Part shown: positions 1,881-62,453 of the stretch, piece after piece
Layout of the letters: the number at the start of each line of letters is the position of its first letter
How positions within the stretch are numbered: the first letter of the stretch is position 1
DNA from: Haliotis cracherodii
Lineage: Eukaryota
Reading direction: 5' to 3'
DNA: 64,000 bases
Assembly: GCF_022045235.1 (NCBI RefSeq)
Contig: NW_027266308.1
Location: forward strand, 35,526,001-35,590,000
Notes under the pieces: generated by a model
The model's input: the letters and a program-made list of their open reading frames with translations, nothing else
Told to the model about the DNA's origin: nothing
The model's database searches: none
Made by a program: the position numbers and the translations under genes

Positions 1881-2695
1881 ATGACAAACTTACCTCCCCA
1901 TCTGCTTCAACCCCTTAGCATCGACACCAACATCACCTACGACCTGGATATGTCCAAGTTCCCAGGTCTGGACGACCCTCAACATATGTACCAGCCTGCT
2001 CTGTTGATAGCCACTGACTGGAGCGACTACGTCAACCACGACACGCAGTGTGTCACACGTGACGCAGATATAAATCGTGTTCCAACTATTCTTGACGATC
2101 ATGGTTATCTTCAAGGTATGTTTAGATTGTGATGCGCCCTCTTTGCTTTGCTTGTATACCTTTTGTTAAATGGCTGTATATCGAAGTTAATCGAAGTAGG
2201 ATGTTGGTAAACGAAGGATAATTAATCTTTTCTTTTTGTATTTTTCGACACAAGTAAATAATACAAGACTTCACATGTATTAATATCATGATTTTATCTT
2301 CAGATTCCAACCAGAATTTGTTCTCCGACCTTGACCCCAGTAGTGCTTTGGATAGCAACACGTTCCAGTTCATATTGGATGACGTCGTTGAGGAACTGTC
2401 ATTTTCATATGACAATACATTCTCTCAAAATACGCGTGTGAACACAGATCTTTCACCTAGACGAGATGTGGGAAATTGTGATTTAGATTGCTATCTTGAC
2501 ACAGTATATGGGATCTCTGCCGATGGGTTACCAGCTGTGGCGTCACGTGTTAGAGGACAGAAAAGACTCCGATCTGCTGTTGAAGATGCTGATACCAGAA
2601 AGAAATCAAAGTTGACGGACGATTCATCAGTTCTTCCCTCCAATGTGCCTGTGTGTTCAACATATGGACATTGTGATTTATCCAGACTGTCGTGA
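1881..2695 (+). CDS. G1: uncharacterised 'LDMSKFPGLDDP' family protein, subfamily A, 208 aa; exons 1881-2115 and 2304-2695
   Basis: ATG at 1881 (cacaATG). Donor CAAG|GTATGT after 2115; acceptor ttttatcttcag|AT before 2304. The phase-1 join G|AT restores the frame of ORF 2288..2695. Same structure in 6 paralogues. Confidence 0.85.
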
Positions 2696-5600
2696 TCACA
2701 TGTTTGAATTAATCAATCACCATGCTTTAATGTAAACTCGCAAAGAGTCAGTGTGATCAGAGGTTCCTAAGAAACAAATCTAGATTGACCGCATAGGAAA
2801 CAAACGTACAACTAGTGCTAGACGTGAATACTACAGTTATACAACTTCCTTATGTTATCTTTACCTTGTTGTTGTCGTTTTGTTGTTTACTGAAATATAT
2901 GAATATGACAGAATATATTTAGTTATGTCTTGTTTACCATGCATCCTGTCTGGTTAAAACCCCTCCTTTCCAATCTACGTGCACTTGCGAGCCATGTTTC
3001 ATCTGGCTTGTTATATAAGCAATACAGCAACATCAGGTTAAAAAGACAGATGACGAAAGAAAAAGTTCAAGTGAAATGTCTTTTAAAATAATCTTTCTTA
3101 AGGAACATTTATTTGTTGAATATAAAATTTCTAAATTTATGTCAATATAAAACGTCAACGCCAGAGAATGGTCTCGATTTTCTGCCAACACAGATTCGTT
3201 TTGCAAATTGCAAACTAGTGATGAAAACCATATGAAAGAACCACTGAAAACCAGTGATGACACCAGCCACTCGTTGAGAAGTGTAAGCATGTCCTGCTCC
3301 ACCGGTACCACCCACCACTCACACACGTTGCAAGTCAGAGATTGGTTGGTTCCCAACGCCGCTCCCTTGAGTTATACTAATATTTACGCGTTGTATGCAG
3401 ATGAACTTACAGTTCAGATACAGTACTGGAAATATCTCTAATGACATCTGTGAATGAATGGAGATGAATCCTATTTGGAACATTAATATGTAATTTCACA
3501 GCAATAGGTCATCACGCAATGCAAGTGACAATGGGTTAGGAGGCGTAGTCTCTCTTGCAGAAACCAGAGCATGTATGTAATGAAACATCTACCCCCTTAT
3601 CACCCGTCCTAACTCTAGCAGTCTGTATTATGTCCGTTCTTAGCTGGGTTCCTTAATACTCTATGGTTCCCTAATAGAATGGTTGTTATTTAACCTTATA
3701 CATGGTTATATTTCAGGAACGGAATGTTAGTCTTAAGGAAGATATTAGATCAATGGTTATTCGATCAATTGATTGACTGATACACTAAATACACATTTTT
3801 AATGTCATGAAAAACATGCTTCATGGACCTCTGTACAGTTAAGCACCGCTGATGGCTGAAATGGATAGGTGACCGTGTTCCGCACCTTGATTCCTGAGAA
3901 TGTCTCGGACTTTGTGCCCCATACTGAAATGGGGTGTCTCCTAGGGACAGCGACGGTGTTCGAAATACGTCTCTCTTCACTCAGCAGTGAATGGGTAGCC
4001 AGTGGAATGAGAGGGCAATGTGACTTTTGACCTTCTAGCACCACACACAGACAGCAGCTTAGATTGTAAACTCTCCAGGGAGCTGAGAATGAAAATCGAG
4101 TGTTTATGAAGCACCTTAAATACATTATCATACTAGGTGTTCGCGATGAGTTGAGTGTACACCTGTGTCAACTATCAAAAACACATGCAAAGGCCAGTCA
4201 AATGTTCCCCTGAAAGAACACGGGAACATTATGGTACAAGTCAAAGGACATTGCAGCGGGCATCATCTTTACCCCTGATGCTACAAATTTGGAAATGCCA
4301 TCCACATGCCTACCATGAAACGTATTGAAAGCTTTACTAAGGCCTTGAATGTTTTAGCCTTGATCAAACTTAGGATAAACAGTGGAAGGGGATGCCTATT
4401 TCAGCAATATTGGACGATTTTAGATCATCGATATACCTGAAATTAAACCCCTGGGCATATTACCTTGTTTTCACTTTGCCAATCCTATTCATATGCAGAA
4501 AGAAACAGATCAGCAAGAAGAGGCGCATAATTGGTGCCCGTGATGATGCTTGCTCTAGTCTAAATGTCTTACCCTCAAAATGTACATATATGTTAATGAG
4601 GAAGTCCACCATGTTACGTATTGTTTTCTCATTAAACTCCGGCTTGCATTTGCTTTAATTTTCTTACAAATTGCCCGAAACTGTATCTGTGGTTACCACG
4701 TTTTGTCACAAAAGCCCCATGGATCACCGAATGAAGTGTTTCCTGAAGTTTGTAATGCGGGATAGTGGTACAAAGTTGAAAAATCAAACGTTAGACAAAA
4801 CTTGGTTTCTTTCTGAGATTGTAAAACGCAAGCAAATCCTTTGATTTTTGAGAATCCACGTGCTATTAATTCCACTTGTCTCAAATACTTTCTGTAAATA
4901 TAAAGAGAGTCAAGGCTTTCGTGGTACTTTTGCTGGACCCAGCAATATATCTCTCTTTTTACAGATTTTGAATCCAGTAAAAAGATGAATGAACATGTGT
5001 TCATGTATAAGAGTGAAGACAATGGTTGATAGTACTGTTGCATGGTTTTGGCAGACTTCTTCCTCAGTTACGAAACTGGCCTTATACTAAGTGCTTCGGT
5101 CAAACAATTGATGTAGTGATGCTTGCATATACTGGTTATATTATTTGAGGCTTTGTGATTGGGAACAGCTACAAACTTTGCATGTAGACTTTGGATGACG
5201 GCTGGCTGGGACAAAATGGGTTCCAGATATTTTTATGTCACACTTTCCCCGAAGGTTTTCACTCTCATTACAGTGTGGGCTAAAACGCATTGCCCTTACA
5301 ACATGTCTTATTGTTTAAGTGCAATGTGCTTGGTGCTTAATTAACTATCGTTAACTATTGTTAATTAATCGTAACGCCGTGTATGTTTGTTCTCAGGGGC
5401 AGCTTTATCGTACGAGAACCAATGTGTGGATAGTAATCGTTTAATGATCCTCCTAATCCTCATAGATATTGTTCAATCCCTTAATCCATCTCAAATGTCA
5501 GTCGAACTAGAAAATCTTGGATTATATCCAACGCTTCACAGATTAAATGCTTTGTCATTCTAATCCATTCAGGATCGTGAGAAATAAGTGCAGTAATCGA

Positions 5601-6367
5601 TTATGATCCCTCGCGCTGGAGAAACACAACCAAAAAAATAATTGGATATGTCAACTCTCAACTTAACTCATTTATTTCTCGAAAACCCACCCACGCTTGT
5701 ACATGAAATGCTAATTAATTTGACTAATTGTTATGCACATGATTAATACATATCGAGAGGCCTTTTAGATCTCTTAAACTGTTAGTGGTGAGAAAATTCT
5801 TAAAATGGAAACAGATTTGGAAACTTATGATATAATATATTAAGAAATCAGTAAAGCGATGAAAGTAATGAAACTCCTCTCCTCCAGTAATTGAATTGGA
5901 ATGTAAACATTAGCGGTCTTTCCTGGGAAACGCTTAGTGCCAAAACCTGCAAGGCAATTTTACAGCTGCGTAGTAATGTTTTATATAAAGCCTAATATAT
6001 TTTTTAATTTGCATATATGTTGAACAGAATTTTATCTTCGATAATGTTTTTAAACTATGATTATACTACTTCTAGTAGTTTGTCTCTCATAACTCCAATA
6101 GGAGTGGCTCATTTTATTTTATTTTATGTTATTTTTATAGCATTTTATATGTAAATTAAGGCGAGACATAAATAAACTATCTGTCTGTCTGGGAATGTTC
6201 AGCCATCGACCGGTTTCACCGGGTACCCTGTGACATTGATTTTGAGAGTAATAAATATTATTTTAAAAGAAAGGTTGATTCTTTAGGAACAAGCAAATAC
6301 GACCCCTTAGAGCTTCAATCAACAGCTGATTTCTAATTTTTAAGGAATTGAAGTCTGTGTATATTTT

Positions 6368-60929: not shown

Positions 60930-61106
60930 GGGGGCACGGGTGGCCCACTCGTCTAAGGCGCCGTGATTCGCTGTGCAGAGTTGCGTCCCTTGGGCACGCC
61001 AGAAATCTATGATTGTGGGTTCGCATCCCGGTTCCCCCCGATTATGTTTCTAGGTTTGTCAGCACCATACTCGTCCTCGTGGGTTTCACCAAACTCACTC
61101 ACTCAC
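60930..61106 (+). mobile_element. SINE family 3 copy, internally deleted, 12-bp TSD
   Basis: TSD TCAGACAGTGAA at 60918-60929 and 61107-61118; lacks about 100 bp present in the 20084 copy. Confidence 0.85.
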
Positions 61107-61638
61107 TCAGACAGTGAATGCCCTTGGTCCACTAACAGACATCCATTTTCGAAACGAGCTGTACCAAGTTTTTTAAATGTATGGAAACTATCAATATGGG
61201 CACCTCTTTTAAGGCCAGTGTTTTAAAATGTTTACTTTCCGGCACCTTTCTCGTTAGAACACGCATAACAACTATGAGAAAAACACATATTTTTTAAGAA
61301 ATCTGGTTTATTTAAAAAAACAATAAATCAAATCAACAAATGTAAATATGTAACAATATGTATGGCACCATAAGTCCTCGTATTATATAAATATAAAAAT
61401 AACATCTCTAAAAAATCCCTTTTGGGTATTGCACAAGAAGCCACATGGCTTCATCTATCTGAATGCTTCATTCATCCTTGTCCGCATGAAATACAACACT
61501 GGGTGTTCGCATTTCACATCACTATTTCATAGTGATTCATAAACACATGCTCATGATATACTGATAGTCGGTACAGCATAAGGGACTCAGCATTTATCTT
61601 ATGATAATAGAATTGGTTTGTCACTTGTGATTGAAAGT

Positions 61639-62453
61639 CTATGACTCTCTGCCAATTCCACCATTCTTGGATTCGTGACACAAATTTACCACCAAATAAG
61701 GTAACGCTTGCGTGAATGACTCCATCATCTTTGATCTTTTTTCAACATCCGGGTAACAGGCGTCATCGGAGAGACGTCGCTTTTGACCTCTACCGCAAGT
61801 TCTAGCAGAGAGTAATTCTTCCATGACCGGGGAAGAGGTTAATCTAATGTTGGGGGTTGTATGGTCTGTTTGTTGAGAATCACTTGTTGACAGGGAACTT
61901 TGACTGTCAGTATCCAAGTCAATTAATCCAAATATGTCACTTGGTATCACTGAATCTGCAATGACGTCATCGAGGAGTGTCTGCATGGTAATGTCGTCGA
62001 CAGCGAAACCTTGGTCTGTCAGCAAGGCATCAGTTGATTCTGTAAGAAAAAAGAGCAGTTCATAAGTAATTTTGTTCACTATAGGATCATTTTCAAAATT
62101 ATATGCATAAGCACATGAAAAATGAATCATGTAGAAAACGTAAAATTTTTTTTTCATTATCCGTTACTTTTACGTTCAGATTCTGGTGACAACGTATACA
62201 TACCTATAAGAGAGTATAAATCGCTTTCTAAGACACCGTCCGATTCATGGGAACTTGAAGCACTGTTTGCGTCATGTGTGACAAGCTGAGCGTCATGGTA
62301 GACGTAGTCGCTCCAGTCAGTGGCTATCAACAGAGCAGGCTGGTACATATGTTGAGGGTCATCCAGACCTGGGAACTTGGACATATCCAGATCGTAGGTG
62401 ATGTTGGTGTCGATACTTAGAGTTTGGAGGAGATGAGTAGGTACGTCCATCAT
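61639..62453 (-). CDS. G7: same family, subfamily A, 216 aa; exons 62453-62204 and 62039-61639
   Basis: MMDVPTHLLQTLSIDTNITYDLDMSKFPGLDDP... Donor ATAG|GTATGT; acceptor ttttcttacag|AA; 164-nt phase-1 intron; in frame with ORF 61639..62157. AATAAA at 61312-61307. Confidence 0.85.

What the first reader, a model, noticed from the sequence alone, without database searches (positions are those of the whole stretch)
1881..62453. Cluster of seven intact two-exon paralogues encoding an unrecognised protein family (LD[ML]S[KR]FPGLxDP motif)
Seen: seven loci (ATG at 1881+, 12841+, 28080-, 34524-, 41081-, 50162-, 62453-). Each pairs a 235-313 nt coding exon 1 with a 392-557 nt coding exon 2 through one phase-1 GT-AG intron of 141-340 nt, always joined as G|AT or G|AA. 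All seven spliced frames are open (208-289 aa) although everything around them is decayed repeat. All share a ~40-aa N-terminal motif PxHxxxxLS[IV]DTxxxYxLD[ML]S[KR]FPGLxDPxxxxxPxLx[IV]A. I do not recognise it as any homeobox, zinc finger, bHLH, bZIP or enzyme domain. The ORF track splits each gene into two short pieces, so the family is easy to miss. Inference: a lineage-restricted, tandemly amplified family of small nuclear regulators. Short, single-intron, TATA-driven, clustered, fast-evolving genes are typical of early-zygotic, germline or rapidly induced programmes, but no function can be proven from sequence.
Basis: partly seen in the sequence, partly recalled or inferred. Interest (0 to 1): 0.92.

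Follow-up and report, generated by a model that had tools for sequence, protein, structure and literature searches.

The report
Abalone cluster of unnamed nuclear-protein genes
Seven real, intact two-exon genes of the black abalone (one shown spliced in RNA assemblies) belong to an unstudied, mollusc-wide family of small, mostly disordered, probably nuclear proteins that abalones have multiplied to about 26 copies; what they do is still unknown.

Summary
All seven loci sit at the stated ATGs. Each has one phase-1 GT-AG intron (188, 188, 141, 141, 340, 216, 164 nt) and an open spliced frame (208-289 aa).

- **Source and annotation.** The window is Haliotis cracherodii, chromosome-scale contig C45. 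Three models equal RefSeq "uncharacterized" proteins letter for letter.
- **Splicing.** The G6 intron is skipped exactly in transcript-like contigs of four runs, from four studies and three organisms.
- **Selection.** It is purifying: dN/dS is about 0.1-0.2 in the N-terminal motif and 0.2-0.7 elsewhere. Promoters are conserved between old paralogues, whereas introns and flanks are not.
- **Copy number.** The genome holds 26 exon-1 copies: 22 within about 250 kb and 4 in a second cluster on the same contig. They are not dispersed like a transposon.
- **Range.** The family is not abalone-only. Limpets, scallops, mussels and a pearl oyster have members with the same motif, acidic motifs, bipartite NLS and probably the same intron position.
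- **Known relatives.** No Pfam, PDB, viral or literature match was found.
- **Structure.** AlphaFold gives a mostly disordered chain, an N-terminal stretch of moderate confidence and two low-confidence acidic helices.

Best reading: small nuclear adaptor or co-activator proteins. The function is inferred, not shown.

The scan also noted this family on the adjoining window (s1-829564). The assembly gap is intergenic.

The parts
1881..2695 (+). G1: exon 1 CDS 1881-2115, intron 2116-2303 (188 nt), exon 2 CDS 2304-2695 incl. stop; 208 aa (A1 type)
12841..13655 (+). G2: exon 1 12841-13075, intron 13076-13263 (188 nt), exon 2 13264-13655; 208 aa; 98% identical to G1, copy of an ~11-kb tandem unit
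27196..28080 (-). G3: exon 1 28080-27786, intron 27785-27645 (141 nt), exon 2 27644-27196; 247 aa (B type); exon 2 is 76% identical to H. asinina P0007, which has the same junction
33706..34524 (-). G4: exon 1 34524-34275, intron 34274-34134 (141 nt), exon 2 34133-33706; 225 aa; H. rufescens orthologue P0067 has the same length
40073..41081 (-). G5: exon 1 41081-40832, intron 40831-40492 (340 nt), exon 2 40491-40073; 222 aa; equals RefSeq P0068
49077..50162 (-). G6: exon 1 50162-49850, intron 49849-49634 (216 nt), exon 2 49633-49077; 289 aa (B type); equals RefSeq XP_071081095.1 (P0002); intron skipped in contigs of 4 runs
61639..62453 (-). G7: exon 1 62453-62204, intron 62203-62040 (164 nt), exon 2 62039-61639; 216 aa; equals RefSeq XP_071080488.1 (P0048)
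1753..1759 (+). Inverted CCAAT box (TGATTGG) of G1. Equivalent boxes: 12713-12719 (+, G2); 28149-28155, 34601-34607, 41158-41164, 50232-50238, 62539-62545 and 62572-62578 (all -)
   Evidence: 8 of the window's 12 TGATTGG lie 70-130 nt upstream of the seven ATGs on the gene strand; present in 21 of 25 family members
28170..28179 (+). Exact TGATTGACAG (PBX:PREP DECA consensus) in the G3 promoter, 14 nt from the TGATTGG
50254..50263 (+). Exact TGATTGACAG in the G6 promoter, 15 nt from the TGATTGG. These two are the only exact matches in the window
50200..50206 (-). TATATAA of G6, 30 nt upstream of a TCATTT initiator-like site at -14 of the ATG. G3 has the same box at 28117-28123

Best explanation
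These are seven functional members of an undescribed, mollusc-wide gene family that abalones have amplified in tandem.

Each gene has a compact promoter with a conserved inverted CCAAT box and a TATA or TATA-like box. Each has two coding exons split by a phase-1 intron at a fixed place, just after a conserved D-[DE]-L-x-x-L-I motif.

The product is a small (about 190-310 aa), mostly disordered, acidic protein built from four short modules:
1. An N-terminal motif of about 40 residues under strong purifying selection. It has alternating hydrophobic residues, then F-P-G, D-P and P-x-L-hydrophobic-hydrophobic.
2. Two acidic amphipathic helices of the kind seen in activation domains.
3. A bipartite nuclear localisation signal (K-R-K ... 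K-R).
4. A short C-terminal tail specific to each subfamily.

Most likely mechanism (inferred): the protein is imported into the nucleus. It docks through the N-terminal motif onto a conserved partner. It then uses the acidic helices to recruit the transcription machinery, acting as a non-DNA-binding adaptor or co-activator.

Shown: gene structure, splicing of G6, selection, family range, copy number and promoter conservation. Inferred: nuclear location, docking and transcriptional role.
For: - **Gene models.**. Three equal RefSeq proteins.
- **Splicing.** Contigs of four runs, from four studies and three organisms, skip exactly 49634-49849, with GT..AG on the gene strand.
- **Selection between species.** In those contigs synonymous:non-synonymous changes are 4:1, 9:5, 8:7 and 8:8. 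All changes in residues 1-44 are synonymous.
- **Selection between paralogues.** dN/dS is 0.09-0.19 in the motif, 0.2-0.7 in the rest of exon 1 and 0.2-0.5 in exon 2.
- **Genome copies.** All 26 genomic exon-1 matches are free of stops. In the 25 that carry the motif, the frame reads into an intron-like stretch straight after the L-I or L-Q motif. 21 of them give clean two-exon models. All 11 exon-2 matches are open and paired.
- **Family range.** 47 hits among 1.84 billion representatives. The named ones are Haliotis (4 species), Lottia, Patella, Pecten, Mizuhopecten, Mytilus and Pinctada. The N-motif, acidic motifs and the K-R-K ... K-R signal are conserved across them.
- **Structure.** AlphaFold2 gives mean pLDDT 54. 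Residues 1-40 score 71-83 without secondary structure. Helices at 73-92 and 99-112 have low confidence (about 50-58). The rest is disordered.
- **Charge.** Net charge is -7 to -15 per exon in the A-type proteins.
- **Promoters.** Footprinting gives G3 vs G6 z=24 and G4 vs G7 z=20, against z about 0 for introns and flanks. The CCAAT box is placed consistently.
Against: - There is no experimental or homology-based evidence of function. Pfam, PDB, viral contigs, the ESM Atlas and full-text searches gave nothing usable.
- The nuclear signal and activation helices are pattern-level inferences.
- No partner is known.
- RNA support was laid for one gene only (G6). The runs are 'RNA?' by guess, although a spliced contig argues for RNA.
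- The B-type proteins (G3, G6) are much less acidic than the A types, so one shared mechanism is not assured.
- One RNA contig starts 213 nt upstream of the G6 ATG, beyond the predicted TATA-directed start.
Confidence: 0.5

Rival explanations
1. Short-lived nuclear regulators of another kind. The N-terminal motif would be a degron or an enzyme-docking site (E3 ligase, phosphatase or kinase). The proteins would act as stoichiometric inhibitors or timers, for example in the cell cycle or a stress response, rather than as transcriptional adaptors.
For: - The disordered chain, a conserved short motif at the extreme N-terminus and the nuclear signal fit this equally well.
- Paired CCAAT boxes 31-34 nt apart occur in several members. 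From my own knowledge, that spacing is typical of G2/M-regulated promoters. TTTAAA-type elements follow them in the A-type genes.
Against: No known degron or docking consensus fits the invariant residues (my own comparison, not a tool test). The two conserved acidic helices have no role in this model. Nothing was tested.
Confidence: 0.2
2. Self-associating adaptors. The alternating hydrophobic stretch of the motif forms a beta strand that pairs with the same motif in other copies, so the paralogues build homo- or hetero-oligomers.
For: Strict hydrophobic alternation over about 13 residues. Some distant relatives carry two or three copies of the motif in one protein (P0012, P0018).
Against: AlphaFold2 shows no strand in the monomer. 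No evidence bears on self-association either way. Most other molluscs seem to have only one or a few copies.
Confidence: 0.08
3. Not functional genes: decaying duplicates, or ORFs carried by a transposon or virus.
For: They lie among retroelement debris, and one tandem unit carries a reverse-transcriptase fragment.
Against: - All copies are open, and dN/dS is well below 1.
- The motif is conserved between gastropods and bivalves.
- G6 is spliced in transcript-like contigs, and promoters are conserved.
- Copies are confined to two clusters on one contig, against at least 70 dispersed copies for the neighbouring retroelement.
- There is no viral relative.
Confidence: 0.02

Closest known systems
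RefSeq 'uncharacterized protein' models of Haliotis (H. cracherodii XP_071081095.1, XP_071080488.1; H. rufescens LOC124146633, LOC124146643, LOC124146649, LOC124146610; H. asinina; H. rubra)
   Same: G5, G6 and G7 are letter-for-letter these proteins. G3, G4, G6 and G7 have one-to-one orthologues in other abalone species.
   Different: No paper in the searched library cites them.
Uncharacterised proteins of Lottia gigantea (LOTGIDRAFT_229424), Patella caerulea, Pecten maximus, Mizuhopecten yessoensis, Mytilus spp. and Pinctada imbricata
   Same: Same N-terminal motif, acidic L-I and D-D-V type motifs, and K-R-K ... K-R signal. Unspliced ORFs read '...L-I-G-K/M' where spliced proteins read '...L-I-E/D/A'. 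This fits the same phase-1 intron.
   Different: The representative search returned only one to a few proteins per species outside Haliotis, against 26 here. Middle regions cannot be aligned.
Sp2 N-terminal tether (SP-box plus YA-SLiM) on the TALE/NF-Y platform (bioRxiv 10.64898/2026.02.16.706105)
   Same: What it works like: a disordered region with short conserved anchor motifs that dock on DNA-bound factors. G3 and G6 promoters themselves carry a DECA site next to a CCAAT box.
   Different: No zinc fingers and no demonstrated sequence relation. The P-A-L-L-I-A-T resemblance to the SP-box is from my memory only. Spacing here is 16-17 bp, not the canonical 11. This is an analogy and a lead, not membership.
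Small acidic non-DNA-binding nuclear co-regulators such as the CITED and SERTAD families (my own knowledge)
   Same: Small size, disorder, acidic amphipathic motifs, nuclear targeting and few exons.
   Different: No sequence similarity. The Pfam scans of all exons and of 32 family members found neither family.
C16orf90 / DUF4644 (PF15486)
   Same: Nearest ESM Atlas cluster by features, score 0.76.
   Different: The score is below the tool's own level of meaning. There was no Pfam match to PF15486 even at E up to 10.

Membership tests
The mollusc-wide 'LD[ML]S[KR]FPG' family (defined here) | N-terminal motif P-L-x-[IV]-D-T-x3-Y-x-L-D-x2-x-F-P-G ... P-x-L-hydrophobic-hydrophobic | tested here: met
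   All seven genes have it. The profile finds 47 proteins and 26 genomic copies.
The mollusc-wide 'LD[ML]S[KR]FPG' family (defined here) | Phase-1 intron directly after the D-[DE]-L-x-x-L-I motif | tested here: met
   RNA proof for G6. Read-through ORFs of other taxa end in L-I-G-K/M.
The mollusc-wide 'LD[ML]S[KR]FPG' family (defined here) | C-terminal bipartite basic signal K-R-K ... K-R | tested here: met
   K and R columns are invariant or nearly so in 32 proteins. Present in all seven.
Any Pfam family or solved structure | Significant profile match | tested here: not met
   No hit above noise for the exons or for 32 members. No PDB chain at E up to 10.
DUF4644 (C16orf90) | Match to PF15486 | tested here: not met
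   Absent from the Pfam results at E up to 10. Atlas score is only 0.76.
Transposon- or virus-borne ORF | Dispersed copies; relatives on viral contigs; transposase, RT or capsid domains | tested here: not met
   Copies lie only in two clusters on C45. No viral relative. No such domain.
Sp / NLZ (SP-box zinc-finger factors) | C2H2 zinc fingers plus SP-box | tested here: not met
   No zinc-finger domain in any member. SP-box likeness could not be tested, because no tool-given SP-box sequence was available.
Canonical DECA-CCAAT composite promoter element | TGATTGACAG and CCAAT 11 (10-12) bp apart | tested here: not met
   Exact DECA in G3 and G6, but 16-17 bp from the CCAAT pentamer. This is nearer the ~20 bp average reported for zebrafish blastula sites (PMC6023610).
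Nuclear transcriptional co-regulator (functional class) | Nuclear location and effect on transcription | not testable with these tools
   Only sequence patterns and a disordered, helical AlphaFold2 model.

The most novel reading that the evidence does not exclude
The 40-residue N-terminal motif is a previously unknown docking module for a conserved DNA-bound platform, for instance TALE/NF-Y. That would make this a mollusc-specific family of co-activators. Their own DECA-CCAAT-TATA promoters would place them in an early-embryo or germline programme, and abalones would have diversified them into about 26 variants.
Probability: 0.1. Interest if true: 0.75.

Novelty: new variant of a known kind. 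Interest (0 to 1): 0.45.

Why it matters
Molluscs lack functional annotation for a large share of their genes. Here is a family that:
- is conserved between gastropods and bivalves;
- is invisible to Pfam;
- has at least one member (G6) spliced in RNA-type assemblies of three organisms;
- is under purifying selection;
- has been expanded about 26-fold in abalones, which are farmed and (black abalone) endangered.

Its sharply conserved N-terminal motif is a ready-made bait for finding a partner. Its compact conserved promoters (CCAAT, TATA and, in one subfamily, an exact PBX:PREP site) give a direct handle on when it is switched on. If it proves to be a transcriptional adaptor of early development or stress, it would be a new lineage-specific layer of regulation. 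If not, it is still a clean case of birth-and-death evolution with gene conversion in a tandem array.

Tried and rejected
- **Pfam.** Scans of every exon peptide, 32 full-length relatives and 8 distant hits found nothing.
- **PDB.** The profile search gave 0 hits at E up to 10.
- **ESM Atlas.** Only a sub-threshold C16orf90 lead, and a low-confidence model with TM under 0.35.
- **Viral contigs.** No relative.
- **Rfam and tRNA scans of the window.** Nothing.
- **Full-text searches.** Gene and protein identifiers and motif strings gave 0 papers.
- **The search for homologous proteins with the family profile.** It was swamped by the candidate cap and returned only 5 proteins.
- **Third cluster look-up.** No names, so the taxa of the ENA and Logan hits stay unknown.
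- **The look-up of encoding contigs.** No orthologous DNA or synteny could be fetched, so between-species selection rests on the laid contigs.
- **Complex prediction.** Two copies of residues 1-60 gave no verdict (score 0.01). This is not evidence either way.
- **Fold search.** Not run, because the model is too disordered to give meaningful matches.
- **Motif comparisons from memory.** I compared the motif with HIF oxygen-degradation, calcineurin PxIxIT/LxVP, eh1, 14-3-3, SUMO-interaction and LIR motifs. None fits the invariant residues, and none was tested.
- **Joined sequences.** Spliced sequences were joined only inside scripts, to test frames and build the tree. No joined sequence went to a search tool. 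Searches used single exons by reference, or database proteins identical to the models.
- **Human DNA and N runs.** No N was filled.

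
Full report
**Observation**

Within each frame there is one strong phase-1 donor (GTATGT, GTACGT or GTAAGT) 235, 235, 295, 250, 250, 313 and 250 nt after the ATG.

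Among the in-frame acceptors, the one with the best polypyrimidine tract gives introns of 188, 188, 141, 141, 340, 216 and 164 nt. It gives junction codons G|AT or G|AA and uninterrupted frames of 208, 208, 247, 225, 222, 289 and 216 aa.

The seven exon-1 peptides share 19 invariant positions in the first 44 residues. The exon-2 peptides share an acidic 'hydrophobic-x-x-L-L-D-D-V' motif and a basic K-R ... K-K/K-R signal. The seven fall into A-type genes (G1, G2, G4, G5, G7) and B-type genes (G3, G6).

The flagged assembly gap (17235-17561) is intergenic, 3.6 kb beyond G2 and 9.6 kb from G3. A second N run (62905-63037) lies about 450 nt upstream of G7. Genome-wide searches with exon-1 and exon-2 profiles find no fragment beside either gap. 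Nothing depends on continuity across the gaps, and nothing was filled.

**Where it comes from and who else has it**

The window is contig C45, 35,526,001-35,590,000, of a 1.18-Gb genome.

A profile of the seven exon-1 peptides was read against 1.84 billion representative proteins and found 47 hits.

- The best hits are RefSeq 'uncharacterized' proteins of Haliotis cracherodii, H. rufescens, H. asinina and H. rubra.
- Compared exon by exon, G6 equals P0002 (XP_071081095.1), G7 equals P0048 (XP_071080488.1) and G5 equals P0068, all H. cracherodii.
- G4 has a 225-aa orthologue in H. rufescens. G3's exon 2 is 76% identical to an H. asinina protein with the same junction.

More distant named hits come from Lottia, Patella, Pecten, Mizuhopecten, Mytilus (three species) and Pinctada. 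All of them share the N-terminal motif, the acidic motifs and the K-R-K ... K-R signal.

Many unnamed hits are unspliced exon-1 ORFs that end '...L-I-G-K/M'. The Mytilus pair P0028 (unspliced) and P0027 (spliced, '...L-I-E-S-C') shows the same phase-1 G|GT boundary. The gene structure therefore seems to be as old as the family.

**Copy number and history**

The genome holds 26 exon-1 matches, none with a stop. Twenty-two lie between 35.40 and 35.65 Mb of C45, and four lie at 6.72-6.74 Mb of the same contig.

In the 25 matches that carry the motif, the frame reads into an intron-like stretch straight after the L-I or L-Q motif, which fits the same donor position. Twenty-one of them give clean two-exon models by a simple script.

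A neighbouring intergenic piece shows the contrast. It contains a frameshifted RVT_1 fragment and has at least 70 matches on many contigs. The gene family does not behave like a mobile element.

A maximum-likelihood tree of 42 proteins was built with the quick method and SH-aLRT support only.

- All abalone copies fall apart from the limpet and bivalve proteins.
- One-to-one orthologue pairs appear across abalone species for G3, G4, G6 and G7.
- G1 and G2 form a very young group with two further copies spaced about 11 kb apart.
- So most duplications predate the abalone radiation, and some are recent.

I left L022 out of the tree because my script picked a wrong acceptor for it. L012 and L023-L025 were also left out because the script gave no model. 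The adjoining window was noted by the scan for the same family (s1-829564).

**Are they used?**

Runs found with G6 were laid on 48000-51500. In four runs, from four studies and three organisms, one contig each covers 48918/48954-49633 and 49850-50053/50375. Each contig skips exactly 216 nt, with CT..AC on the plus strand, which is GT..AG on the gene's strand.

The run type is only guessed to be RNA. However, contigs of about 1 kb that end near the gene's ends and lack the intron are what an mRNA gives. One caveat: a processed DNA copy would look the same, but no intron-less copy was found, since every exon-1 and exon-2 match lies in the two clusters. Only G6 could be tested, because one call was allowed.

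**Selection**

The differences carried by those contigs are 4 synonymous to 1 non-synonymous, then 9:5, 8:7 and 8:8. None introduces a stop. In residues 1-44 every change is synonymous. With roughly three non-synonymous sites per synonymous site, that is dN/dS of about 0.2-0.3 (my arithmetic).

Between paralogues, taken exon by exon, dN/dS is as follows:

| Region | dN/dS |
|---|---|
| N-terminal motif | 0.09-0.19 |
| Rest of exon 1 | 0.2-0.7 |
| Exon 2 | 0.2-0.5 |

**Promoters**

TGATTGG, the inverted form of the NF-Y-type CCAATCA, occurs 12 times in the window, as chance predicts. Eight of the twelve lie 70-130 nt upstream of the seven ATGs on the gene's strand. The element is present at similar places in 21 of 25 family members, often twice at 31-34 nt spacing.

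G3 and G6 have TATATAA 30 nt upstream of a TCATT initiator-like site at -14 of the ATG. G1, G2, G4 and G5 have TTTAAA-type boxes, and G7 has none.

The only two exact TGATTGACAG sites in the window are at equivalent positions in the G3 and G6 promoters. L022, another family member, has a one-mismatch copy with the same spacing to its TGATTGG.

G3 and G6 have saturated synonymous divergence. Yet their -250..-1 regions align with z=24, while the introns, 3' flanks and -500..-251 regions do not (z about 0-1). G4 and G7 behave the same way, with z=20. This is footprinting evidence of constrained regulation.

In zebrafish, maternal PBX:PREP binds this decamer close to NF-Y sites at blastula stage (PMC6023610). 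In mammals, Sp2-bound composite sites have 11-bp spacing (bioRxiv 10.64898/2026.02.16.706105). Here the spacing is 16-17 bp, so this is not the canonical composite. I treat it as a lead towards early-embryo expression of the B-type genes, no more.

**What the protein looks like**

- No Pfam family, solved structure, viral relative or paper matches.
- AlphaFold2 with 32 relatives gives mean pLDDT 54. Residues 1-40 score 71-83 without regular secondary structure. Helices at 73-92 (over the exon junction) and 99-112 (the L-L-D-D-V motif) score only about 50-58, and the rest is disorder.
- The Atlas model of the Lottia protein is likewise disordered.
- The A-type proteins are strongly acidic before the basic signal. 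The B types are near neutral.
- In the motif, hydrophobic residues alternate over about 13 positions, as in a strand that forms only on a partner.
- Distant relatives carry the motif two or three times, or near the C-terminus, as a portable module would.

**Mechanism**

The best-supported reading is a small nuclear adaptor. It would be imported through the bipartite signal, dock through the N-terminal motif, and carry two acidic activation-type helices.

- Shown: the genes, the splicing of one, the selection pattern, the range and the promoter constraint.
- Inferred: location, docking and effect on transcription.
- Rivals: a degron- or enzyme-docking regulator, and a self-associating adaptor (the one complex prediction gave no verdict).
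- Non-functional or mobile-element ORFs are refuted.

**Novelty and verdict**

The ORFs are already predicted in RefSeq. The family as such, its mollusc-wide range, its conserved intron, its four-module architecture, the abalone amplification and the promoter grammar appear undescribed in the searched literature.

It is a new protein family of a familiar general kind: lineage-restricted, disordered nuclear proteins in tandem arrays. The score of 0.92 is too high while function is unknown, so I give 0.45.

Noticed in passing
window 34382-34551 and 40939-41108 (G4/G5, -27 to +142 of the ATG): G4 and G5 have no mismatch over 169 nt spanning the proximal promoter and the N-terminal motif. They have only 10 mismatches from -207 to +185. 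Divergence then rises sharply: the rest of exon 1 has dS about 1.2 and exon 2 has dS 0.26. This looks like a gene-conversion tract.
   Followed up: partly
window 522-2700 vs 10802-13660: G1 and G2 are copies of an ~11-kb tandem unit, 98-99% identical. The unit also occurs upstream of the window (genes at C45 35,506,560 and 35,517,536). It carries a frameshifted reverse-transcriptase fragment (7992-8219, RVT_1) of a dispersed retroelement with at least 70 genomic matches.
   Followed up: partly
window 50163-50375: One of the four RNA-type contigs (run X2, the deepest) continues 213 nt upstream of the G6 ATG, past the TATA and CCAAT boxes. This could be an upstream start, read-through or an assembly effect. 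It is unexplained.
   Followed up: no
G000:C45:6,724,712-6,739,640 (L017-L020): A second, tight cluster of four family members lies about 29 Mb away on the same contig. The genes are spaced 3.5-4.4 kb apart, each with the same TGATTGG at -73. The L017 model equals database protein P0011.
   Followed up: partly
P0012, P0018, P0039 (unnamed ENA/Logan proteins): These distant relatives carry the motif two or three times in one chain, or near the C-terminus of a Pro/Gln-rich protein. Their taxa are unknown.
   Followed up: no
window 37126-37211; 11767-12373: A (TA)43 microsatellite. Separately, a CA/AC-rich low-complexity stretch gives long spurious ORFs on both strands.
   Followed up: no
window 1890-2114 (-), 12850-13119 (-), 34357-34572 (+), 40125-40439 (+): ORFs of 71-104 aa lie antisense to the family's exons. 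They mirror the coding exons and have no support of their own.
   Followed up: no
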